From Pelomyxa schiedti (taxonomy: Eukaryota; Protista; Evosea), in assembly GCA_020536535.1 (NCBI GenBank), contig JAHLWZ010000016.1, positions 124,001 through 188,000 of the forward strand: 64,000 bases of DNA, in the 5' to 3' direction. How positions within the stretch are numbered: the stretch's first letter is position 1; each line of letters starts with the position of its first letter. The notes under the pieces were generated by a model. That model had not been told where the DNA came from and did not search any database. It saw only the letters and a program-made list of their open reading frames with translations. The translations under genes were made by a program, and so were the position numbers. Positions 45,292 to 59,349 of the stretch are shown one piece after another.

Positions 45292-48200
45292 ATGCCGAAC
45301 TCCCATGCTCTTTTTACGCACCACGGTGGTGGTGGTGTTTGTTGCGTTCTATTGGCGTTACTCGTAGGAGGTAGCTTTTTTTTTACTTTCCCCATTATGT
45401 GCAACCGGAGTTAACTTTTTTTTTTTTTTTTCTCCCCTCCCTAGTATCGATGTCTTCCAAAGGTTTGATCCTCTTATAATCTTATGCAGGGAAATTTAAA
45501 AACCTTACTTTGGCTCCCCTTAGTTGGATTTTTTATTGGCAGAGATTCTTCCCATGAGTCTGTGTGGCCTCTCTTGTCCTCTTCTGCTCCCTCTATCTCT
45601 GAATGCCAGTTTTCGTCAACTACAATGGTAGTTTCATTCGGTGCTGGTGATTTAGTGGATGGACTGTTTTATGCCATAAACACTGCCGACCACAACCGGC
45701 TGTATTCCTTCACCTCTGGATGTGACACTCCGATTCCCATTGGAAGCACTCCACTAGCAACTTACCAGGTGTCTGGAATGACTTGGTCAGCATCCACTGG
45801 AACAATGTACATCTCCTACGCATCACCTAGTGGTGCCTTTGTCAGTACAATTGATTTGACGTCGGGAAATCTGGGGAAAACACCTATTATTTCTTCAGGT
45901 TCCACTATTGGCCCAATTGCATTTGATGATACACATGGACTGCTTTACGTTTTCATCGACAATATCTTGCATAGATACAATACCGGCTGGTCCATTGATA
46001 AGACTTGGTCCTATACCTTTCCTGAGTGGATTCCAAAAAGCTTGTCTTATGACAAGTGTGAAGAAAAGCTGTATGTTTGGGTGAATGTAGCTGGTTATTC
46101 CTGGATATACAGTTTAGATACAACGAGTGGTACTACTTCTCCCGTACTCTCGACAAAGGAGATATCACCTAGTTTTTTGTGCCACTCTGATTACTGTAGG
46201 GCTTACAATCTGAGAGCTGTCAGTTCCTACAGTTCCAGCGAGAGTTCTAGCCGGAGTTCGAGCGAAAGCTCCAGTGACAGTTCAAGTGAGAGCTCCAGCG
46301 AAAGCTCCAGTGAAAGTTCAAGTGAGAGCTCCAGCGAGAGTTCTAGCCGGAGTTCGAGCGAAAGCTCCAGTGAAAGTTCAAGTGAGAGCTCAAGCGCGAG
46401 TTCAAGCGAGAGTTCAAGCGCGAGTTCAAGCGCGAGTTCAAGCGCGAGTTCAAGCGAGAGTTCAAGCGAGAGCTCAAGCGCGAGTTCAAGCGCGAGTTCA
46501 AGCGAGAGTTCAAGCGAGAGCTCAAGCGCGAGCTCAAGCGCGAGTTCAAGCGAGAGCTCCAGCGAAAGCTCCAGCGAAAGTTCAAGTGAGAGCTCCAGCG
46601 AGAGTTCAAGCGAGAGCTCCAGCGAGAGTTCAAGTGAGAGCTCCAGCGAGAGCTCCAGTGAAAGTTCAAGTGAGAGCTCAAGCGCGAGTTCAAGCGCGAG
46701 TTCAAGCGAGAGCTCCAGTGAAAGTTCAAGCGAGAGCTCCAGCCAGAGTTCGAGTGAAAGTTCGAGCCAGAGCTCCAGCCAAAGTTCAAGCCAGAGTTCG
46801 AGTGATAGTGAGAGTTCGAGTGCGAGCTCTAGTGCAAGTTCCAGCCAGAGCTCCAGTGAAAGTTCTAGTGTGAGCTCGAGCACAAGTGAAAGCTCAAGTG
46901 CGAGCTCGAGCGCAAGTGAAAGCTCAAGTGCAAGTTCAAGTGAGAGTTCCAGCCAGAGTTCAAGTGAGAGTTCGAGCCAGAGTTCAAGTGAGAGCTCTAG
47001 TGTAAGCTCCAGCCAGAGTTCGAGTGAAAGCTCCAGTGTGAGCTCCAGTGAAAGTTCCAGCGAAAGTTCCAGCCAGAGCTCCAGCCAGAGTTCTCATTCG
47101 AGTTCCAGTGAGAGCCGAAGTGCCAGTTCACTGAGTGAAAGCTCCAGTGAGAGTTCAAGCGAGAGTTCCAGTGCGAGTTCCAGCGAGAGCTCCAGCGAGA
47201 GTTCAAGCGAGAGTTCCAGTGCGAGTTCCAGTGCGAGTTCCAGCGAGAGCTCCAGTGAAAGTTCCAGCGAGAGCTCCAGTGCGAGTTCCAGTGAGAGCTC
47301 AAGCATTAGCTCAAGTGAAAGCTCCAGCCAGAGCTCGAGTGAAAGTTCGAGCCAGAGCTCCAGCGAAAGTTCCAGTGAAAGCTCTAGTCAGAGCTCCAGC
47401 GAAAGTTCCAGCAGTGAAAGCTCCAGTAGTGAAAGTTCCAGCAGCGAAAGTTCCAGTTTGAGTTCCAGTCTGAGTTCCAGTGAAAGCTCCAGCAGCGAAA
47501 GCTCAAGTGAGAGTTCAAGCCAGAGCTCCAGCGAAAGTTCGAGCAGCGAGAGTATAAGTTCAAGTTCACGTAGCGAAAGTTCCAGTGAGAGCTCCAGCCA
47601 AAGTTCAAGCAGCGAGAGTATAAGTTCAAGTTTACGCAGCGAAAGTTCCAGCCAGAGCTCCAGTGAAAGTTCCAGCCAGCGTTCCAGCAGCGAAAGTTCC
47701 AGAAGCGAAAGTTCCAGAAGCGAAAGTTCCAGCAGCGAGAGTATAAGTTCAAGTTCACGTAGCGAAAGTTCCAGCCAGAGCTCCAGTGAAAGTTCCAGCC
47801 AGAGTTCCAGCAGCGAAAGTTCGAGCAGCGAGAGTATAAGTTCAAGTTCACGTAGCGAAAGTTCCAGTGAGAGCTCCAGCCAAAGTTCGAGCAGCGAGAG
47901 CATCAGTTCAAGTTCACGTAGCGAAAGTTCGAGCAGCGTGAGTTTCAGTTCAAGTTCCAGCAGCGAGAGTTTTAGTTCAAGTTCCAGCAGCCAGAGTTCT
48001 AGCGAGAGCTCCAGCGAGAGCTCAAGTTCCGGCAGCCAGAGTTCCAGTCAGAGCTCTAGTGTGAGTTCAAGTATGAGTAGCAGCGAGAGCGAGAGCTCTT
48101 CTACCTCAGGTACAACCCCCTTTTTACACCCGCTTTTTCATTTTTTCCTCACACATAAACAGAGTCGTCATCCACATCACTCTCTTCGTCCTCGAGCTCT

Positions 48201-48404
48201 GTGTCCTTGTCCTTGTCCTCTTCCAGCAACGGTGTTCCGGCCTATGCCTGGGCGATCCTTGGTGTTGGTCTAGCCCTTATTCTACTTACAGGATCGGCAT
48301 GCGGCGCCGTGTTTGCCTTGCACGCACACAGAAAGAAGTACACACAGACCTTCAAACCCACCGAGATGATGGTACTTGGTGGTTGGGAGGAAGACGTCGT
48401 GTAA
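45292..48404 (+). CDS. Type I surface glycoprotein: signal peptide, beta-rich head, roughly 600-aa Ser-rich stalk, TM helix, short tail
   Basis: First exon MPNSH...VCCVLLALLVG; 929-aa ORF with (SSSE/SSSA/SSSQ)n; last exon AYAWAILGVGLALILLTGSACGAVFALHAHRKK. Confidence 0.8.
46222..48100 (+). repeat. Coding minisatellite, 12-nt unit AGY-TCN-AGY-GAR (SSSE)
   Basis: About 1.9 kb of degenerate agttccagcgag/agctcaagcgcg units with higher-order blocks such as SESISSSSR. Confidence 0.95.
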
Positions 48405-48506: not shown

Positions 48507-50600
48507 CTAGGACTTGGTCGTTGTGGTGGTAGGAGCGGGTGTAGGTGTTACTGCTTCACTGGGCGTGGGTTGGGCGGCTGGCTTGGGTACTACGTTCCCG
48601 TAGAGCAAAAGCCTGAGGTCGCCGGTTGCCGCGAGTTTGTTGTGTGCTTCAAGGCACTTGGCTTGGAAGTTGACTCCTTTACCAATGCCATCAGCCACGT
48701 TGTGGTGGCGGAAGGGATCCTCAATGAAGACTGGGCCCTAAGATATTATAAGAAACTTGGAGTGCTTTGAAAGCTGTTTCCAACCTTCTTGCCGGTGTCT
48801 GTGCGTGGCACGTTGGGTGTTCCCAGGCGAATGCTCACCTAAAATATTGGAAGATACCACGAGGTGGAAAACCGTGCACTTACCATGTTCTTCCCGAAGT
48901 TGAATTCCTTTCCATAGAAATGGAACAGCTGAAGAAGCAGCTGGCCTTTGCCAGTGGCATCCAGAGGGCGCTTGGGAAGGAATTGACTTGAACGCCAGAA
49001 ACAGTTCTCACCCTCCACAGCAAAACCTCCGCGGCATTGATCTGCACTTGTGCGCTCAATGTCTTTCTGAAGATTAGGCAGAAGAGCTGGATTCCTTAAC
49101 GAATTAAGGAGACAAGAACCACCGAAAGAATATACCTTGTTTGGAAAAAGTAAATCACAAGAAGGTCAATGCAGAAGGAGCTGGACAACAGTTATCGGAA
49201 AAACAGGGGGGGAAAGGTGAAAGTTACCTCATCCAAGATTTCTTTGGGTTGAACCAACCTATGCTCTGTGCCCATGCCTTGAGTGCAACAACAATTGGCT
49301 TGTTTCATTCTTAGTATACCACAAACACAGTTATCAAATACCTGTATACGGCGATCCATCTGGATGTAGTCACGGGTAAGTTGAGTCGAGAAGATGCAGA
49401 TATCATGATTGATCACGAGATTGAAAGGAAAAGGGAAAGCACTGAATGAAAACAATCAGGTGGAAGTTAAGAACGAAAGAAAACTACTCTGTGGGTCGCA
49501 TCTGGGTAATGGCAGGTACATGTGTCTGAGTAAAGGACAAATTATTGGCCAGGTCTTTTTGCGCGTGAGAGGGGTTAAACAGGATAAGGAGCACACATAG
49601 ACTCAGAACTTGAAAAAAGGCTTGCAAGGCTTGTTTTTCGGGCACATTGGACTGGTGGATGACTGAAAGCTCAAAATGCTCACCAGGGACAGCAGTACGT
49701 TCATTCACAGAACCATAGGTGTACAAGGAGCCTAATTTGTATTGAGAAGGGATAAGAACATTTCATTCATACATGGAGGGACAAAGTTGTTGGCAGCAGC
49801 CTGTGCGAAAATGATTTGAAGCTGGGTCACAAATTCCTCCCTTGCACGGTAATCAGGTTCCTTCAAACTGATCTGGTACAGTGTTACAGGGGCTGTGTTG
49901 TTAAGGGGCCAACTTGTTTGAAGAATTCAATGAATTGCTGTTCGAACAATGCTAAAGCTCCTTCAGAGGCATGCACAACAGGGTGCAGAAGGGGGCATGT
50001 TTCCTGGTGCTTATGAGCTATTATATTTTGGAGATAAGAAAACAAGATGAGAAATGTATGAGCCCATACCAGAAGATTCATCTCCTTTCTGTGTGAGATT
50101 AAACTGAATTCCACAAGAGCACGTGAGAGCCCAGCCATTAAGCTTGTAAGTACTGCAGGGAGTTAAAACTTCTTGGAAACAGTTTGGTAGAACTTATATT
50201 ATATAGTTTTTCATACGTGGCAACTGGGGCAATATCTACTCTAAGCTTTTTCCCGCCCACTTCGCGTGCTCTTAGACTTTCTAATGCGGCCTTGACCAAG
50301 TCTGTTGTCTCAAAAAGGGCAAAAGCAACTGACTCCACAACAGAAACCTCCTGTTGGTGGAAGTAAATATCCAGCGAGTACTCCCAATGGCGTTACAAAA
50401 TGGACACGTACCTTGGCTCCAGAAGACCTCAACAAAGGCTCTATGGTCTTAGCATCAACTTCAGGTGTCAACCGGACACGTAGAATTGGGTGGTGTGCTT
50501 TGAGAGTGGCTTCAGAAGGTAAGGCAGGAGCCCTGGCAGGTTTTTTGTTCTGGGCGCGTTTCTTTCCTCTGGAACGTACATAAGGAGTTTGTGACGCCAT
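48507..50600 (-). CDS. RRM + non-canonical poly(A)/terminal uridylyltransferase fold (TUT1/Star-PAP-like), catalytic motif degenerate
   Basis: RRM (VAFALFET...KKLRVDIA); LYTYGS; STQLTRDYIQMDRRI; PAP-associated GQLLLQLFHFYGKEFNF, VSIRLG and FIEDPF..HNV. Confidence 0.78.
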
Positions 50601-51053
50601 TTAGTGGGTGCGTGGAGCAAAGCAAAGAAGCGATTCACTTAGGAGCGATTTCCACGTGAAAGGCACAACCGAGAGGGTGAGGTGCACTTTTGTTGGATCT
50701 TGCGAGTAGTCGGTGGTGTTGTGCTTTGTGCGTTTTTGTGGATCTACAAGACAAAATGGTAGTACCCAACAGCGGGTGTCGCAGTTGTCATAGCCGGTGT
50801 CGCGGATGCTGTCGTCGCCATGGTTTTTGTCGTTGTTTGGTTGCGGTGCTGGTGAGTGCCCCCCTTTTGGTTTCTTTTTTTTTTTTTTTTGTTTTGTGTT
50901 TAGTTCCGAAAAGATCCTTTTTTGCTTGGCGAAGTGACTTTTAAAAAAATGTTTCCTTGTCTTATTTTTTCTCTTTCAGTTGACGCAATTGAAGCGGTGG
51001 TTTTCACAAAAAAGCGAACGTAACTCGAACGCGCCCATAATCGCTTGTAGTGT

Positions 51054-51968
51054 CTACGTGGACTTGTTGCGTTTAGTTGTCCCCTTGCTCGGTGTGTGTC
51101 CCTCGTCGTCATCGCTGTCCTCAGACTCTTTGCTGTCGCTGTCGCTCTCACTTCCACTACTTTCACTGTCACTGCTATCACTGTCGCTGTCACTGCTCTC
51201 CTCATCATCTGATGAACTTTTGGTGACTTTTGGTGGCTTGCCCAGGGGCTTCTTGTTCTTTGTTGTTGATGATTTTTTAGTAGCAACAGCAGCCTGGCCA
51301 GAACCGACTGGGCCCGGCTTCTTCCCCTCAGCCGCATCAGCATCAGCACCGGCACAATCATAACCACAACCACAACCGGCAAAGTCGTTGGCCGCCATTT
51401 CCTTGAATATCTTGACCAGCACGTCGCCGTGGCACTGGTCGCCGGGCTTCTCCTTGCACCAGCACCCGAGGGTCTTGCCCTCGAGCTCGCGTATGTCCCG
51501 CATCAGCTCGGGGTGCTCGGTCCTGAGATAGTCCTCGTACTTGCGCACGGCCTCGGACAGGCCCCCGGGGCAGCTCTTGACGGCGAAGGGGTTGGCCCAC
51601 TTGCTCTTGGCCAGCCTCCAGCCCCCCATGTTGCACTGCCTGCCTATGTACACGTCGCAGTCCTGAACAACCACCCCGCCTTTTCTCTTTATCTTCACCA
51701 CTCGGGGTGGCTTCCTTGCCACCTTGTTGGCTGCTGCTGTTGCTGCTGGTGGTGGTGGTGGTGTTGCTGCTGCTTTTGGTGATGCCGAAACTGTTGTTTG
51801 TTGATGTGCAGTCTTAGTGCTTGTTGTCGATGCGGGTGGCTTTGTTGTTGTGGCTGTCGTTACTGCAGGCTTGAGCGCCTTTGGGTCCAATTTTGTAGTT
51901 GCAGATTTGGTGTGGTCCTTGTGCGTCGCGGGCTTCCTTGGTGGCACTGACGATTTTCCCTTCATCAT
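51054..51968 (-). CDS. DUF4326-domain protein with low-complexity flanks
   Basis: VVKIKRKGGVVVQDCDVYIGRQCNMGGW...SKWANPF...ELEGKTLGCWCK...CHGDVL matches the DUF4326 signatures; single exon. Confidence 0.88.
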   Translation of the reverse strand: MMKGKSSVPPRKPATHKDHTKSATTKLDPKALKPAVTTATTTKPPASTTSTKTAHQQTTVSASPKAAATPPPPPAATAAANKVARKPPRVVKIKRKGGVVVQDCDVYIGRQCNMGGWRLAKSKWANPFAVKSCPGGLSEAVRKYEDYLRTEHPELMRDIRELEGKTLGCWCKEKPGDQCHGDVLVKIFKEMAANDFAGCGCGYDCAGADADAAEGKKPGPVGSGQAAVATKKSSTTKNKKPLGKPPKVTKSSSDDEESSDSDSDSSDSESSGSESDSDSKESEDSDDDEGHTPSKGTTKRNKST

Positions 51969-52139
51969 TAACACGATTTTCGCGATGCCCAATGAGAAAA
52001 AAAAATTACTTTACGCCGACCAAAAAGGAGCTCCAATCCTTTTGGTTTTGTGCTCTCGTGTGGTGTGTCAAAATTAGCCTACTGGAGGAGGCAGACTTTG
52101 GATGCCTTTGTGTTCTTGTGCTGTGGTGATTGGTGTTGT

Positions 52140-52239
52140 NNNNNNNNNNNNNNNNNNNNNNNNNNNNNNNNNNNNNNNNNNNNNNNNNNNNNNNNNNNNN
52201 NNNNNNNNNNNNNNNNNNNNNNNNNNNNNNNNNNNNNNN
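52140..52239. other. Scaffold gap with exactly duplicated 121-nt flanks (52019-52139 = 52240-52360)
   Basis: N run with identical sequence on both sides. Confidence 0.95.
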
Positions 52240-52299
52240 ACCAAAAAGGAGCTCCAATCCTTTTGGTTTTGTGCTCTCGTGTGGTGTGTCAAAATTAGC

Positions 52300-53935
52300 C
52301 TACTGGAGGAGGCAGACTTTGGATGCCTTTGTGTTCTTGTGCTGTGGTGATTGGTGTTGTGTGGTTGGTGTGTGCTTCAGAGAAAGTGGGGGAATGTGAG
52401 TGACTGCCGGAGGTGATTTTGCGGATTTGGTGGCCAGTGGGGGTGACTTGGGATTGGAGCCGGAATTCACTTGCGGGGGTGACCGCGATACCGTGGGTGG
52501 TGATCTGGAAATTGTGGGATTGGGGGACCGGGAGCCCCCAGGAGGTTGTGGTGACCTGGAAGCCGTGGACCGTGGTGATTGTGATTGAGGGGGGTGTGTG
52601 CGGTGTGATTGTGGCTGTGATTGTGTGCTTGTTGTCGCGGTTGCGGTTGTGGTTGTGGTTGTTTGGTTCCCTCTGAGGGAGGAATGGTGCAGCGGGGTTG
52701 GTGTTACTACTTGTACTGGTGGGGAGGTTGTGGCAAGGGATGTATTGGTTGGTGAGGCTACTATTGCTGGGGATGTTGCCTGGTTTGGTGAGGTGTTTGC
52801 ACCATGTTGTGGGGGCTGCGAAGCGGATGAAGTGGTAAGCGGTGCTGATAGGGAAAGAGTGGGGGCAGCTGTAGTTGCAGTTGAGGGGGGACTGTGAGAC
52901 CGTGAAGCTGGCACGGATGCCAACCGAGAGGGAATGGAGTGACTTGGTGAGATACCTTTCTGGTCATGCTGAATGAACCCCTCAGATCTCATGAATGATA
53001 AAATGAGTTCGTCATCTAGACCAGGAGGTCCGCTGCAGGATGGAGTATCGTTCTGGGCTTCATCCCATAAAACCATAAACTAGCCTCATTTAGGGATATT
53101 TTGAGTGTTACAAGTCAAGGTACCTCAATTGTCTCCTCCCCATTCATTTCCCGGGAGTAGACCTTCAAATTAGAAACTGCAGAGAACCTAGAAGCGGCAC
53201 CCTCCAGTAGGCCAGTCACCAAAGGAGTGAGACCCTGCCGGGTTCGAGCCCCTGGTGAGTACTGCAATATCATGGTAGTTGTAGCATCCTGCTTGGTGAC
53301 TGACAGAATTTTAAACCTTGTGTGAGTGTTGGAAGCAGTTGGGGAAAAGTTCTAAATGGCACACATTGGACTTTTCATAGGAGTGACCTCAGAACAAAGT
53401 GAATGTACTCTATTAACATTTTGCAAAAATTGTAGGAAAGTGCTCCCTTCGGAGCAAGTGAGAAAAGCTTATTTAAAAAAAAAAAAAAAAACACGACGAG
53501 ATTCTAACCCGAAGTAGCCAGTATCTTCCTGAAAGTGGTGTCCGTTTCCTGCTGCTCCAGCCAATACCTCCCAAAGAGCACCATGACGTCCGCCGGCCTC
53601 ACTCCCAACGTCGCCGCCGCCGCGAAAACCAGCGCGAACGTCTCCGCGTCGTCGTACTGCTCGCCTCGTTGCCACTCGCCCCCGCCGCCGCCGCCGCCTG
53701 GAACAACACCGCCACCATTCGCTGTGCTTTTCCCACTCCCAGGGGTGCTTTGTTGGTTCTGTTGGTTGTCTGCGGCAGACGAAGACGATGAAGAGGACGA
53801 CGAGGCAGACTCTGACTGGGTGCTGGAGATCGAGCGGTGAAGGAGGTTGGCGGCTGTGAGGATTTTGAGCCACACATCGGCACCAAACTTGGTGATGACG
53901 AGGCTTTTGATGGCAAGGTTTATTACCCCCAGCAT
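52300..53935 (-). CDS. Stand-alone H-NOX (heme-NO/oxygen binding) domain protein with S/P/T-rich linker and C-terminal CAAX
   Basis: MLGVINLAIKSLVITKFGADVWLKIL; YDDAETFALVFAAAATLG...FGRYWL; FLQFLQNVNRVH (proximal His); LQYSPGARTRQGLTPLVTGLLEG; ends KNTKASKVCLLQ*. Confidence 0.85.
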
Positions 53936-54279
53936 TTGGTTTCTGCGTCTTTTTCGGTAGTGTGAAGGTCTCCGTCTGCCACCAAAAAAAAACCAATCGG
54001 GCTTCGTGTCGGGTGGCGCACTCACGAATCAAATGTAAATTGATAATTGATCCCCCCCGCTCCCAGGCCCTTTTTCGGATGGGGACTTTTTCAAGAATAT
54101 CACGTGATTTCGGTCGAAAGAAGGTCAGAATCTCGATTGTTCGCCTTTGAGTGTGCAAGTCTCCTTCCCGCCTGTTGTTGCCCGTTTCACTTTCTCTAGA
54201 ACTTTTTCAGAATGTTATTACTTGGTACTTCTCAACTCTGGGATAGAGACTTTGGAATAATGGTGGGTGTTTCTGTTGT

Positions 54280-55588
54280 TTACAGCTCTTGATGTTGTGG
54301 TGTTTTTTGGATGTGCTGGACATAGGGTCCCCCATTGCCTTGGTAGCCAATTCCTCTTCTAGTGAACAGAATGATATCTGACTTGGCTTTCTCATCCCGT
54401 GGAACTCCTCCAGGTACTGGTGTGTTGAACTGGTTGGCCCAGAATCGGTAGTCATATTGACATTGGAGCCCATTTTGCTTTATATCTGATTGGAGATAAG
54501 TACACTTACCATGTTGTAGTTAGCATACATATAGAAAATACAGCCTGGTCAAACCTGTGATTTTGAGTGGTTGCTCCTGTAGGTGCTATGCAATCAGCCT
54601 ATAGTTTTTTAGTTTTCTCTTAAAAAAAAATAGTACTGTTGCAGATTTGACACACCACAAGGGCGCAAGCAACAGTGGGGAGCAAAACATTGTAATACGC
54701 ACTGCTGTTGAGTGCATACCCTTGTATGCCTCCAGCACACATCACAGCATCCTCAAAGGAAGATCTGTCAATCCCCAAGTAATCACTAGTTCCTTTCTTG
54801 AGGTGTTAAGAAACCAAACAGACAGATAAAATGTGCAATTTACTCAAACCCAATTCTCCCTCTCCATTATTCAAAGATACATAATATATCAAATACAACA
54901 AGTCTATTCACATCTTCCATCTCCCCATAATGCCAAAACAGCCGCGCCTCATTTCCATAAAAAACAAACACCCAAGCCACAAATACACACCAGTGTGGCA
55001 CAGCTCCCCAATGGTCCCGCAGCACTTGGCCTTTGTCTTGAGGCCCTCCTGCACCACGAAAAAGTAGCCGTCCCTCCTCAGCATGGCCTCGATCTCGGCC
55101 AGCGGCGACCTGATCTCCTGCCCCGCGTCCTGGTACAGCATGAGGCCGCCGAACCCCGGCCGCGACATCGCGTCCAGCATGACCACGGGCTTCCACGCGT
55201 AGTTCCGCAGGTTACGCAGGTGCCCCGGGCGGCGCGAGAAGTCGAAGCGGCGGAGCTCCACGCCGAGCCAGCCGCGCACCTCGGCCCGCTGCGGCTCGTC
55301 CAGGCCCAGGTCGTAGACCACGACCGGGGTGCCCGGCGCCCAGAAGTGCAGCGACCCCACGAGGTTCTGCAGCCGCGTGAAGAACCCCGAGGACGCCGAC
55401 GTGACCACAGTAAGGGTGCGGCCGTCGGTCGCAGGGGGAGCCGCGGAGGAGGCCCCGGGTGGGTCTGATTGACCCTGCGCAGGCGACAAAGTCGGCACGG
55501 CTGCTGGTTCCTCGACTGCTAGCACGGACACCACGAAGGTCGCAAGGCACGCACACAGAACTACTACCTTTCGCCTCGCTGTCATCAT
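54280..55588 (-). CDS. DUF1647-family secreted or membrane protein (GT-A-like glycosyltransferase candidate)
   Basis: N-terminal hydrophobic segment; VVTSASS, VVVYDLGL, RRFDFS, YAWKPVV, YQDAG and CAL-ADCIAPTG...NHRFDQAVFS. Confidence 0.8.
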
Positions 55589-55649: not shown

Positions 55650-58600
55650 ATGGGCGGCGCCATAGCACCCGAGCCACGGCCGAGTGTTGTTGGGTACGAA
55701 GAGTTCCAAAGAGCATTGAGGGACCGCGGCGAGTTCTTTGCGAGGCTCGAACAATCAGCCAGCATCGCGGAGGTGCAAAACTCATCTGTGAGTGTAGTCG
55801 TGGCCAGAAACTTCAAGTTGGTGCGACCAATCTCACACGGATGCAACGGTAAAACAAAACCCCAAATCAAAGCAGCGTGTCACCGACTCATCTTGGGGAG
55901 TGGTGACGAATTGACACACGGTGACAGGAATAGTGTACGAGGTGAAGTGCATTGGGCAAGGACACCCTGAATTTTTCAGAGACCAGTCTTATGCACTCAA
56001 GGCCCCTTTCAATTTTGGCCACACGACCACAAACGTTCCGAATGAATTTGAGGTATCTGTCTGTCTTTGATTGTTGTACTGTGCATTCCTAACGACCCTT
56101 GCCTCCTCAAGAATGAGTTCCTTGTGTCATCGACGTTGAAACCACACCCGAGTGTCAATTTGTATTTCGGGCACTTCACTGACCGGATCCCACAAGAATA
56201 TTGGGACTGCCTTCCACCCGTGGCCAAAGAACTGGCATTTGACAAAGTGCATAAGAGGATGCACGCGTGCATGTGGATTGTGTTTGAGTACCACACTGGA
56301 ACTCTGGAGAAATTTTTGAGGGACATCGGCACGGCAGCTCCAAAGCATCCCCAAACCGCGGCAACACCGTGGCCCATTGTTCACAAGTATTCAAGGGATA
56401 TCTGCTCTGCCCTTGTGCATCTTTTCGAGAATCAAACGATTCACTTTGACATCAAGTTGGACAACATTGTAGTTTCCTCAGTGCGTTGTCTGTTTCTTTT
56501 TCACAAACTCAACCATCACAAAACCCAACAGAACAAAGAACAAGCAATTCTGATTGACCTTGGGTGTGCAAAAAACTTTCCAATTTCAACAACCGGCAAC
56601 AGAAGGGCATTTGAGATTGAAACAATGTCTCTCACTTCAGTAACAGGAAATCCAAGCCACCGAGCACCTGAAATCCTCAATGGACTTGCACGATACAGGC
56701 AGAGGCCAGATCCTACCTCGACATTGTGCTGTGACAAGGTTTTCCTGAAATCCCAAATCTATTCCTTTTCCACATCTTTGTTTCATCCTCCAATGAAAAC
56801 AGCAACCGTCATTTGAACTTGGGTGTATTTTGTTTGAACTTGCCATGTTTACACAGCATCCACTGCCTGGTTATCCTGCAGGTTATGGACCAAGTGGGCA
56901 GATAATATTTTCGTTTGAAAGTGAAGAACAGTTCCCCATTAAACCGCCAGCATTCCCCAAGACATTCTGTGACCTTGTTCGGGGATTGCTTCAGTTTGAT
57001 CCAGAAAAAAGGATGAACCTGTTGGAAGCTTCTGAGGTGTTGGCAAACTTAGAGTCGCCACATCCTCTTGAACTCCTCTCATTTTACCCTTGTGTGGTAC
57101 CTGTGGCAAATGATGCAGGTTAGGATAAAGCAATTAAAAACTCCAAAGCTGAAGCAACTCAGGGGCAGTTACAACCAAGGCAGTGTGCCAGATTCTGTGT
57201 GCTGAAACAGAAGCATGTATGGGCACCCTGCATAAAGCACTGGAAATTGAACCCCTATTTTCACTGGCCTTGTTGCTTCATCATTACCTAAATGCTTGTT
57301 CTCTCCATGTCAATCACACTACTCGTTTTGATTGCCATCCAGAAGTTGGCACAGTCTTCACAGGCAAAACAGCCTCATTCACAACTACGGATGTGGAACT
57401 TATGAGAGCGATTATCAACAAGCACGGAGCTACACTCCCTGAACTGGTGTTGGCGGCGCTGTGGACAAGGCACATTTCCCGCGAAGATGACAAGTTCCGC
57501 AGTATCATACAGTCTCTTCTAAAAAAAGTCCCCACAGCAACGATTCAGCAACCAGAGCTCTTGACAACCCAAATCTCCTCCACAGAAGGCTCAGTCATAC
57601 CCTCTCTTTTTTTGAGGAATGTAATTTTCACACGAAATGAGATTATTCTGGGTGCCCTTGCCCATCTGGACTCGGGAAACATCGACAGTGCTCTTGGTCT
57701 TGTGTCAGATGCTTTCACTTTGTTCGAATGTGAGATGAGCGCCATGAATAGTGTGTTGCCGAACATTCAATTGAAAGACCCTAAAAAAAAACAGAAGATT
57801 GGAAGGACATCCAACCTTGGGTGTATCTCCCTGGATTGTTGTTCCTTTATGGTCTGTGTATTACCCTCGCTGACCAAGTTGCTCTGCACCAACACATACC
57901 AACAAGTCTATCATTGGTGTTCTCTCTTGCCCTCAGTAGCACAGCACTGGAATTGAAGGACCACTGCATAGGTCTGCTTCAGAACAATATGGAAGGGAAT
58001 GTATGGCAGAACAAAGCAGAGGTACTAGCAGAATGGCAAGACCTCATTGCAACTGCTTCAGCGCTCTGTGGAGAACAACAATCGCCACATACAGAACACC
58101 AGCCACGAGCCTGCTGCGTATTTGTTGCCCTGTGGAAAACCTTCTGCACTGACCATCAATCCATGAGTGCACCCATAGGTGTGGGCCCGCATGTGCCTCT
58201 AGGATGTGCGGTACCAATTGACTGGTGGTCTTCTTCTCTCTTACTCCTGGGTATTTGTAACGACTTCGGCAAGTACATGAGCGAGGCAGTGGCGCTTTAC
58301 CAGCAGGCCGCTACTGCTGAAAATTCCATGGCAACACTGACTCTTGGTCTGTGCTATAGATTTGGCAATGGGGTTGCAAAGGACAAAAACAAGGCAGTGA
58401 CACTTTACCAGCAGGCTGCCGATGCAGGAAATACCAGAGCAATCTGTAACCTTGGACTGTGCTATGAGCACGGCAAAGGAATTGGCCAGGACAAAGTCAA
58501 GGCAGCGGCGCTGTACCAGAAGGCCACTGATGCCGGGAATTACAAGGCAATGTTCAGCCTTGGTCTGTGCTATGAAAGGGGTTCCGGCGTGAGCCAGGAC

Positions 58601-59349
58601 CAAAGCAAGGCAGTGACACTTTACCAGAGGGCCGCTGAAGCTGGGTACACCAATGCAATGTGCAACCTTGGCGCTTGCTATGAACTTGGCCAAGGTGTTG
58701 GCAAGGACATGAAAAAGGCGCTTACTCTTTATCAGAAGGCCGCTGATGCCGGTAGTTCCACGGCAATGTTCGGCCTTGGCCAGTTTTATCAACAGGGCAA
58801 AGGGGTTGTCAAGGACCTGAAGAAGGCAGCAACTCTTTACCAGAGTGCGATTAAAGCTGGGCATTCCGGTGCAATATGCAACCTTGGGCTGTGCTATCTT
58901 CTTGGCAGTGGTGTTGACCAGGACCTNNNNNNNNNNNNNNNNNNNNNNNNNNNNNNNNNNNNNNNNNNNNNNNNNNNNNNNNNNNNNNNNNNNNNNNNNN
59001 NNNNNNNNNNNNNNNNNNNNNNNNNNTTGTCAAGGACCTGAAGAAGGCAGCAACTCTTTACCAGAGTGCGATTAAAGCTGGGCATTCCGGTGCAATATGC
59101 AACCTTGGGCTGTGCTATCTTCTTGGCAGTGGTGTTGACCAGGACCTAGGCGAGGCCATAGAACTTTTTGTGAAGGCTGCTGATGAACATGGGGAGGCCA
59201 GGGCTATGTGTATCCTTGGCACAATTCTTGAAGAAGGCATTGGAATGGACAGGGACAAAGAGAGGGCTGAGAGTTTTTTCAAGAGGGCTGCTGCTACAGG
59301 GGATGCTTGTGGTATTGAAGCCTTGAGACAGTTTTACCTCAAGGGCTGA
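55650..59349 (+). CDS. Protein kinase (PINK1-like features) fused to C-terminal Sel1-like repeats
   Basis: ISHGCNG, YALKAPFNF, PHPSVNLYFGHF, HFDIKLDN, IDLG and GNPSHRAPE; about 7 Sel1 repeats A..NLGLCY..G.GV.KD..KA..LYQ.AA.AG. Crosses an artefactual gap. Confidence 0.85.
58927..59026. other. Scaffold gap with exactly duplicated 121-nt flanks (58806-58926 = 59027-59147)
   Basis: N run with identical sequence on both sides. Confidence 0.95.

What the first reader, a model, noticed from the sequence alone, without database searches (positions are those of the whole stretch)
52300..53935. Prenylated stand-alone H-NOX: candidate membrane-anchored gas/redox sensor without a cyclase
Seen: four exons encode a complete H-NOX domain starting at Met1, with the proximal His in NVNRVH (codon 53405-53403), followed by about 250 aa of S/P/T-rich linker and a basic patch plus CAAX (KNTKASKV-CLLQ*). 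No PAS, coiled-coil or guanylate cyclase domain follows. Established: eukaryotic H-NOX domains are known mainly as the sensor of soluble guanylate cyclase, while stand-alone H-NOX proteins are bacterial and regulate histidine kinases or c-di-GMP enzymes in trans; CAAX ending in Q is typically farnesylated. Inference: a bacterial-style sensor adapted to eukaryotic membrane signalling, an architecture I do not recognise. The position matching the distal Tyr of O2-binding H-NOX proteins is Leu, which would favour NO/CO over O2.
Basis: partly seen in the sequence, partly recalled or inferred. Interest (0 to 1): 0.82.

Follow-up and report, generated by a model that had tools for sequence, protein, structure and literature searches.

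The report
Lipid-anchored gas-sensor domain in anaerobic amoeba
An oxygen-avoiding amoeba makes a protein that is only a haem gas-sensor-type domain on a long flexible tether ending in a lipid-anchor signal, without the enzyme such domains normally switch on, so it probably signals to a separate partner at a membrane; whether it really binds haem or gas is untested.

Summary
Real, expressed gene of Pelomyxa schiedti (NCBI Pelo_332, 'hypothetical', 493 aa). Four exons encode an H-NOX domain (Pfam HNOB 2.4e-23; model of the paralogue's domain matches Nostoc H-NOX at Z 23.8, 1.4 A), an extra helix, a ~220-aa disordered S/P/T linker and a terminal CLLQ. RNA contigs confirm introns 2 and 3 and read unspliced through CLLQ-stop; no PAS, coiled coil or cyclase follows. 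A syntenic paralogue (CLVQ, spliced away in its NCBI model) and an intronless homologue from another sample (CIVM) keep S-K-V-C-a-a-X while the linkers diverge, so the CAAX is selected. Proximal His, Pro, Tyr and Arg are kept and the distal site is Leu, but YxSxR has lost its Ser and gained three residues, so haem binding needs testing. 'Bacterial-style' origin is not shown: trees do not resolve it, and the altered motif is shared with undescribed eukaryote-like H-NOX-PAS-RasGAP proteins. Prenylated H-NOX proteins are known (worm GCY-35, Gucy1b2), but carry a cyclase. Best reading: farnesylated NO/CO/redox sensor acting in trans (0.55). The scan noted the paralogue separately (s1-611456).

The parts
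53509..53935 (-). Exon 1 (aa 1-142): distal subdomain of the H-NOX domain, starting at Met1 (MLGVINLAI)
   Evidence: Pfam HNOB 2.8e-10 for the exon alone; matches P0002 1-142; same start in both homologues. Not covered by RNA contigs.
53681..53833 (-). ~50-aa S/G/Q-rich insertion in the loop after helix B (aa ~35-85), much shorter in both homologues
   Evidence: Alignment; pLDDT 46-55 in this stretch.
53447..53508 (-). Intron 1, 62 nt, GT..AG
   Evidence: Sequence; same position in the paralogue; the intronless homologue P0003 aligns across it without a gap. Not seen in RNA.
53365..53446 (-). Exon 2 (aa 143-170): proximal helix F with His157 (53405-53403), family-specific Cys160 (53396-53394) and conserved Pro169 (53369-53367)
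   Evidence: aligns to Nostoc His105 and Pro118 via the paralogue.
53317..53364 (-). Intron 2, 48 nt, GT..AG
   Evidence: Skipped in RNA contig of run X1.
53124..53316 (-). Exon 3 (aa 170-234): beta-sheet and helix G; altered haem motif Tyr189-S-P-G-A-R-T-Arg196 (53261-53238); distal-pocket Leu202 (53222-53220); hinge Gly205
53080..53123 (-). Intron 3, 44 nt, GT..AG
   Evidence: Skipped in RNA contigs of runs X1 and X2.
52300..53079 (-). Exon 4 (aa 235-493 + stop): last beta-strand, family-specific helix, disordered linker, CAAX
   Evidence: Read through without a joint in RNA contig X1 record 1; no Pfam hit.
52975..53016 (-). Family-specific conserved helix after the H-NOX core (aa 256-269, DDxLIxxFxxxxGF)
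   Evidence: Conserved in all three members; predicted helix 257-266 (pLDDT ~81 in the paralogue model, ~51-60 in the full-length model).
52324..52971 (-). S/P/T-rich disordered linker (aa ~271-486; 53% S+T+P), not alignable between homologues beyond composition
   Evidence: pLDDT mostly under 50.
52300..52323 (-). Conserved terminus S-K-V-C-L-L-Q-stop (CAAX box CLLQ at 52314-52303)
   Evidence: Paralogue ends SKVCLVQ-stop, P0003 ends SKVCIVM-stop; transcript covers it.
52251..52299 (-). 3' untranslated region seen in RNA (at least 49 nt)
   Evidence: RNA contig X1 record 1 ends at 52251; a contig end does not fix the true mRNA end.

Best explanation
Pelo_332 is an output-less, membrane-tethered H-NOX sensor module. 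Shown: spliced, expressed gene; H-NOX fold from Met1; conserved CAAX; no PAS, coiled coil or enzyme domain; the genome has the CAAX-processing enzymes. Inferred: it is farnesylated and held loosely at the cytoplasmic face of a membrane; the domain takes up scavenged b-type haem on His157, with Tyr189 and Arg196 holding the propionates around a three-residue-longer loop; with Leu at the distal site it would bind NO or CO, or be switched by oxidation of the iron when oxygen enters, rather than hold O2 stably. Ligand-driven movement of the distal subdomain and helix F then changes binding to a separate signalling partner within reach of the ~220-aa tether, as bacterial stand-alone H-NOX proteins do with kinases and cyclases. 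The partner is not identified; candidates in the genome are the many class III cyclases (the six I inspected near their coiled coils look membrane-bound and lack an HNOBA PAS), a PAS-type hybrid histidine kinase, or Ras/RasGAP-type proteins, the last suggested by the H-NOX-PAS-RasGAP relatives.
For: Splicing and CLLQ end in RNA. HNOB only. Fold: Z 23.8, rmsd 1.4 A over 179 residues to Nostoc H-NOX for the paralogue's domain; full-length P0002 has the same helices and strands plus a disordered tail. His157, Pro169, Phe171, Tyr189, Arg196, Leu199, Gly122, Gly205, Trp125 invariant or nearly so across 98-131 homologues and kept in all three members despite 55-65% identity. CAAX kept in three proteins whose linkers diverged; chance rate 1.2%. 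Three prenyltransferase-beta loci, ICMT and PDE-delta-family genes in the genome. Three cytochrome b5-like loci show likely haem use; the relative Mastigamoeba lacks haem synthesis but keeps haem proteins (PMC8136499). Only two H-NOX loci in the genome, neither fused to an output. Candidate partners: dozens of cyclase loci, one hybrid histidine kinase. Trans action of stand-alone H-NOX and the distal-Tyr rule: PMC8196705, PMC8738867.
Against: YxSxR is not canonical: Ser is replaced by Lys/Arg and three residues are inserted, where 122 of 131 homologues have the five-residue spacing; Tyr2 is Leu and other pocket positions differ (Gln at a Thr/Ala site, Cys at His+3, Thr/Ala at a Leu site). Pfam score is about half that of typical H-NOX proteins and the branch is long. 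No ferrochelatase and no NO synthase were found (incomplete genome), so haem and NO must come from outside. No partner is linked genomically. Only one Lys before the CAAX is conserved, so membrane binding may be weak. No experiment on haem, gas or prenylation exists.
Confidence: 0.55

Rival explanations
1. Haem-free derivative: the H-NOX fold has been reused as a membrane-tethered adaptor, or senses redox or another small ligand through the family-specific Cys at His+3, without an iron-gas step (compare the haem-less alpha H-NOX of sGC).
For: Altered YxSxR and several pocket changes, including a Cys found in 3 of 3 members and 0 of 128 other H-NOX sequences; long stem branch; host appears unable to make haem; an added conserved helix suggests a new protein contact.
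Against: Proximal His, Pro, Tyr, Arg, Trp and the Met1 start are all retained in three diverged members; haem-less alpha H-NOX domains lose the His or the motif and carry an N-terminal extension that fills the pocket (PMC8196705), which this protein lacks. A bacterial H-NOX in an operon with a PAS-cyclase gene (P0007) has the same insert.
Confidence: 0.2
2. Haem handler or gas sink rather than signal switch: it binds haem released from digested bacteria at vacuole membranes (buffer, carrier or haem-level sensor) or mops up NO.
For: Probable haem auxotroph with cytochrome b5-like proteins to supply; no output domain; membrane anchor; RNA depth gives no sign either way.
Against: No characterised H-NOX that I know of is a dedicated haem carrier (own knowledge); the hinge glycines used for signalling are conserved; relatives with the same insert are fused to signalling outputs.
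Confidence: 0.15
3. True O2 sensor using a distal hydrogen-bond donor at a non-standard position, as would suit an anaerobe.
For: O2-binding H-NOX proteins come from obligate anaerobes and are membrane-bound (PMC8738867); prenylated animal sGCs are O2 sensors (PMC6920132); no NO synthase in the genome. Gln at one pocket-proximal position is family-specific.
Against: Positions matching the Tyr/Trp/Asn network are Leu202, Ile9 and Phe121 (residue correspondence to the Caldanaerobacter protein from own knowledge); structurally closer to the NO-type Nostoc protein (Z 23.8) than to the O2-type (Z ~17.5).
Confidence: 0.08
4. Mis-modelled or decaying piece of a longer sGC-like gene (splices onward to a cyclase, or a relic).
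For: NCBI names the paralogue 'guanylate cyclase soluble subunit beta' and gives it another end; an N gap follows the gene.
Against: RNA reads through the stop; no HNOBA or cyclase in the window downstream or in the paralogue's locus; three members end at the same CAAX; the gap is an unmerged 121-bp overlap.
Confidence: 0.02

Closest known systems
Bacterial stand-alone H-NOX proteins (Nostoc Alr2278, Shewanella SO2144, Legionella H-NOX1)
   Same: H-NOX as the only folded domain, Met1 start, proximal His, Pro, non-polar distal pocket; best sequence and structure matches.
   Different: Spliced eukaryotic gene; extra helix, ~220-aa disordered linker and CAAX; YxSxR altered; no operon partner; descent from them not shown.
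Prenylated animal soluble guanylate cyclases (C. elegans GCY-35 group, mammalian Gucy1b2)
   Same: N-terminal H-NOX plus C-terminal CAAX for membrane targeting (PMC6920132); a PDE-delta-family carrier gene is present here too.
   Different: They carry PAS, coiled coil and cyclase in the same chain; the worm enzymes are O2 sensors. Here there is no output domain and no distal Tyr.
Undescribed eukaryote-like H-NOX-HNOBA(PAS/CC)-RasGAP proteins (P0010, P0068, P0101) and H-NOX-HNOBA-CAAX protein P0050
   Same: Same eight-residue Tyr..Arg spacing (seven in P0050), I-N before the His and K-S-P before the Phe; P0050 ends KKCIVM and has no cyclase.
   Different: They keep HNOBA and, in three cases, a RasGAP output; only 24-26% identical to this family; common descent is not rejected but not shown; source organisms not identified.
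O2-sensing H-NOX-MCP fusions of obligate anaerobes (Caldanaerobacter/Thermoanaerobacter Tar4)
   Same: Membrane-associated H-NOX in an anaerobe.
   Different: Those have the distal Tyr and a fused chemotaxis output; 14-17% identity.

Membership tests
H-NOX / HNOB domain (PF07700) | Profile score above the curated cut-off | tested here: met
   83.3 bits vs 25.5 for P0002; exon 1 alone 40.8.
H-NOX / HNOB domain (PF07700) | Seven helices plus four-stranded antiparallel sheet, starting at the N-terminus | tested here: met
   Predicted models; Z 23.8, 1.4 A over 179 residues to 2o09 for the paralogue's domain. The model used an alignment of H-NOX homologues, so it leans to that fold.
Canonical haem-binding H-NOX sensor | Proximal His on helix F | tested here: met
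   His157, codon 53405-53403.
Canonical haem-binding H-NOX sensor | Conserved Pro (PxF) and hinge glycines | tested here: met
   Pro169, Phe171, Gly122, Gly205.
Canonical haem-binding H-NOX sensor | YxSxR propionate-binding motif | tested here: not met
   Tyr189 and Arg196 kept, but three residues inserted and Ser replaced by Arg/Lys in all three members. Filed therefore as a variant, not as a canonical member.
Canonical haem-binding H-NOX sensor | Binds haem and NO/CO/O2 | not testable with these tools
   Needs spectroscopy.
O2-binding H-NOX | Distal-pocket Tyr | tested here: not met
   Leu202 in P0002, Leu in both homologues; aligns with Nostoc Met144.
Soluble guanylate cyclase beta subunit | HNOBA (PAS + coiled coil) and class III cyclase after the H-NOX | tested here: not met
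   No Pfam hit; local HNOBA profile finds nothing in the window, the paralogue locus or the three proteins; RNA ends after the stop.
Bacterial stand-alone H-NOX | Single ~180-aa domain encoded next to its partner kinase or cyclase | tested here: not met
   493 aa, spliced; neighbours are DUF4326, DUF1647 and an unrelated gene with a Cid1-type poly(A) polymerase match in the paralogous block.
Bacterial stand-alone H-NOX | Descent from a bacterial clade (lateral transfer) | tested here: inconclusive
   Free tree puts it on the side of the short sequences without a starred branch (93/79); AU tests reject neither eukaryotic alternative.
CAAX-prenylated protein | Terminal C-a-a-X, conserved in homologues | tested here: met
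   CLLQ, CLVQ, CIVM.
CAAX-prenylated protein | Host has prenyltransferases and ICMT | tested here: met
   Three PF00432 loci, several PF04140 loci; subunit types not assigned, Rce1/Ste24 not searched.
CAAX-prenylated protein | Actual prenylation and membrane location | not testable with these tools
   Needs labelling and microscopy.

The most novel reading that the evidence does not exclude
A eukaryotic 'split' gas-sensing system: a farnesylated, output-less H-NOX that descends from a hitherto undescribed protist H-NOX-PAS-RasGAP/CAAX lineage, binds scavenged haem through a rebuilt propionate loop and a Cys next to the proximal His, and controls a separate membrane signalling protein (Ras/RasGAP, cyclase or histidine kinase) so that an anaerobic amoeba steers away from NO or oxidants.
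Probability: 0.3. Interest if true: 0.8.

Novelty: new variant of a known kind. Interest (0 to 1): 0.6.

Why it matters
Eukaryotic H-NOX domains are described almost only as the input of soluble guanylate cyclases; sensing in trans is regarded as bacterial. A conserved, spliced, lipid-anchored H-NOX without an output would be a eukaryotic case of the trans mode, and a concrete, small, expressible candidate for how a haem-auxotrophic anaerobic amoeba with oxygen-sensitive methanogen symbionts detects NO, CO or oxidants. Its natural rewrite of the YxSxR motif and the Cys at His+3 test how much of the canonical pocket haem binding needs. The search also exposed H-NOX fused to RasGAP and to protein kinase domains, which suggests gas input into Ras signalling in protists. 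Practical point: the public annotation hides this (one copy 'hypothetical', the other misnamed as a cyclase with its CAAX spliced out).

Tried and rejected
A first exon model with a 36-nt intron 2 (53387-53352) keeps the frame but deletes the conserved PxF; rejected by RNA and by the NCBI protein. Word search with exon 1 alone found nothing (low-complexity insert and length limit). Symbiont or contaminant origin: rejected (three spliceosomal introns, spliced RNA, eukaryotic neighbours, syntenic paralogue). Splicing onward across the N gap: rejected. A third H-NOX gene or an H-NOX-less PAS-cyclase partner in the genome: none found. Trees: a 142-row tree did not finish; the 51-row tree and two AU tests do not resolve the origin; the insert columns were not in the tree. 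ESM Atlas gave only generic HNOB clusters for the domain and nothing for P0010. I could not identify the organisms behind P0003, P0010, P0050, P0068, P0101 (run and sample ids only; one search found no paper). The founding HNOB paper (Iyer 2003) is not held. P0068's terminal CCVHI may be incidental, as it aligns with a non-terminal stretch of P0010.

Full report
Source. The assembly has 52,367,397 bases in 5337 contigs, matching the Pelomyxa schiedti single-cell genome (52.4 Mb, 5337 scaffolds; PMC8887013), and the database names both H-NOX proteins as P. schiedti. P. schiedti is an anaerobic archamoeba that lives with bacterial and methanogen endosymbionts (PMC10579272).

Gene structure. The gene lies on the minus strand in four exons: 53935-53509, 53446-53365, 53316-53124 and 53079-52300, 1482 nt in all, 493 codons plus stop, with GT..AG introns of 62, 48 and 44 nt. 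Each exon's translation sits in register in NCBI's Pelo_332 (KAH3767808.1, P0002, 'hypothetical protein'). Contigs of single-cell RNA runs skip the 48-nt and 44-nt introns, and one runs from 53390 through the CLLQ stop to 52251 without another joint. All three RNA runs are one sample of one study, and contigs show presence only. Exon 1 and intron 1 are not covered: the contig stops at 53390 in a template-switch adaptor sequence (my reading of the loose end). That junction is supported by the paralogue and by an intronless homologue. The N gap at 52140-52239 is flanked by the same 121 bases, which looks like an unmerged scaffold overlap, not a second gene end.

Domain content. Pfam finds HNOB only (83.3 bits) and nothing in exon 4. 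A local profile of the PAS/coiled-coil (HNOBA) region finds nothing in the window, the paralogue's locus or the three proteins. AlphaFold2 gives the paralogue's first 240 residues pLDDT 89.5, matching Nostoc H-NOX at Z 23.8, 1.4 A over 179 residues, human sGC beta at Z 21.5 and the O2-binding Caldanaerobacter protein at Z ~17.5. Full-length Pelo_332 shows the same elements, a ~50-residue disordered insertion after helix B, one extra helix (257-266) and a disordered tail from about 274 to the end. The tail is 53% Ser/Thr/Pro.

A small conserved family. The genome has exactly two H-NOX loci by two searches. The second (G000:C840) has introns at the same three positions and, read unspliced in its last exon, ends SRRGSKVCLVQ-stop. 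Its downstream neighbour is also paralogous to this gene's neighbour at 50570-48590, so the two come from a segmental duplication. NCBI's model of it (KAH3746279.1, 'guanylate cyclase soluble subunit beta') adds an intron that removes the CAAX; I judge that a prediction error, but did not test it with RNA. A third member, P0003, lies on an intronless 1239-base JGI contig, probably a transcript from another species, is about 55% identical over the domain and ends VSKVCIVM-stop. Among 1.84 billion representatives only these three score E<1e-30; the next is at 2e-20 (only the best 150 of 431 hits were seen). Domain, extra helix and S-K-V-C-a-a-X are conserved while the linkers are not, and only 1.2% of random open frames end in such a box. 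The CAAX is therefore under selection. X = Gln or Met points to farnesylation (established specificity, own knowledge). The genome has three prenyltransferase-beta loci, ICMT and PDE-delta-family genes. The upstream basic patch is weak: three basic residues in the two Pelomyxa proteins, one in P0003.

Haem pocket. Kept in all three: Met1 and Gly3 (P0002, P0001, P0003), Trp125, proximal His157, Pro169, Phe171, Tyr189, Arg196, Leu199 and the glycines 122 and 205. Changed: the YxSxR motif that holds the propionates (PMC8196705) reads Y-S-P-G-A-R-T-R, with three extra residues and no Ser in register; 122 of 131 aligned sequences have the canonical spacing. Tyr2 is Leu, and a Cys at His+3 occurs in all three members and in none of 128 others. 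Haem binding is thus likely but not assured. I found no ferrochelatase and no NO synthase (the genome is about 85% complete by BUSCO) but three cytochrome b5-like loci; Mastigamoeba likewise lacks haem synthesis yet keeps haem proteins (PMC8136499). Haem would be scavenged and any NO would be environmental.

Origin. Best hits by score are ~185-aa stand-alone proteins; the two whose contigs I read are bacterial in layout. But the eight-residue Tyr..Arg spacing occurs in only five other sequences: three H-NOX-HNOBA-RasGAP proteins (two of them seen on single-gene, transcript-like contigs; P0068 has no contig on record), a fragment that groups with them, and one bacterial protein. The RasGAP type also shares I-N before the His and, in most, K-S-P. 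P0050 is H-NOX-HNOBA-CAAX without a cyclase. In a 51-sequence tree the family is a 100/100 clade on a long stem, placed among the short proteins without a starred branch; AU tests reject neither a clade with the RasGAP type (p 0.48) nor one with animal sGC-beta-like sequences (p 0.48). The tree cannot decide. The shared indel makes loss of PAS and output from a eukaryotic multidomain ancestor at least as plausible as transfer from bacteria; that is inference.

Mechanism. Most likely (0.55) the protein is farnesylated, binds scavenged haem and acts as an NO/CO/redox switch on a separate membrane partner, as bacterial stand-alone H-NOX proteins act on histidine kinases and diguanylate cyclases (PMC8196705). 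The genome offers dozens of class III cyclase loci, whose HNOBA matches cover only the terminal coiled coil, one hybrid histidine kinase and several RasGAP-like loci; none is linked to the gene. Rivals: haem-free adaptor or Cys-based redox switch (0.2), haem carrier or gas sink (0.15), true O2 sensor with another donor (0.08), fragment of a cyclase gene (0.02).

Comparison and novelty. It works like a bacterial stand-alone H-NOX and is anchored like worm GCY-35-type cyclases and mouse Gucy1b2, which have a CAAX (PMC6920132). It belongs to the HNOB family by profile and fold, but fails the canonical YxSxR test, the distal-Tyr test and the sGC architecture test. Ten literature searches found no description of an output-less, prenylated eukaryotic H-NOX, of H-NOX in amoebozoans, or of H-NOX-RasGAP fusions; the library lacks most subscription journals, so this is not proof. 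Verdict: observation confirmed, interpretation partly supported, a new variant of a known kind, interest 0.6. The scan's other note s1-611456 (1768 letters, same genome) is evidently the paralogue and is not independent evidence.

Noticed in passing
P0010 (L021-L026), P0068, P0101 (L028), fragment P0080 (L041): Eukaryote-like proteins of 849-906 aa with HNOB + HNOBA + RasGAP; P0010 is on record in 40 blocks of the collection as ~3-kb single-gene contigs. No paper held has both 'H-NOX' and 'RasGAP'. A possible gas input to Ras signalling, arguably as novel as the finding itself; organisms unidentified.
   Followed up: partly
P0141, P0050 (L027), P0076/P0091, P0146: Other non-cyclase eukaryote-like H-NOX architectures: HNOB+HNOBA+protein kinase (P0141), HNOB+HNOBA+CAAX (P0050), HNOB+HNOBA only (P0076, Diphylleia rotans), HNOB plus an unassigned ~450-aa region (P0146).
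   Followed up: partly
L038:207-1911: Bacterial stand-alone H-NOX (P0007) directly followed by an HNOBA + guanylate cyclase gene: an sGC split in two genes; it shares the three-residue motif insert.
   Followed up: no
L003:5594-7360 (G000:C840): Paralogue; the NCBI model KAH3746279.1 is misnamed as a cyclase subunit and has an extra last intron that removes SKVCLVQ.
   Followed up: partly
window 48590-53935 vs L003:5594-9870: Two-gene syntenic block duplicated between contigs C16 and C840 (50-89% aa identity); the neighbour has a Cid1-family poly(A) polymerase match in the paralogous copy. The DUF4326 gene at 51054-51992 lies between them only in the window.
   Followed up: partly
window 52019-52360: 121 bases repeated on either side of the 100-N gap (52240-52360 = 52019-52139), duplicating the CLLQ end; probably an unmerged scaffold overlap.
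   Followed up: partly
window 45484-48273 (+): 929-aa frame: signal-peptide-like start, ~250-aa Trp/Tyr-containing domain, ~600-aa Ser/Glu repeat stalk, with a likely transmembrane exon at 48201-48404; no Pfam hit. Looks like a mucin-like surface protein.
   Followed up: no
window 54598-54654 (-): RNA-confirmed 57-nt intron of the upstream gene (probably the DUF1647 gene at 54908-55588), whose last exon may be the frame at 54207-54473.
   Followed up: no
G000:C920 (L048, L056): Spliced hybrid histidine kinase (HisKA, HATPase_c, receiver) with PAS-like frames upstream; the only clear HisKA-type kinase the HATPase_c search returned, and a candidate partner.
   Followed up: partly
window 56067-59041 (+): Protein kinase domain followed by Sel1 repeats.
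   Followed up: no
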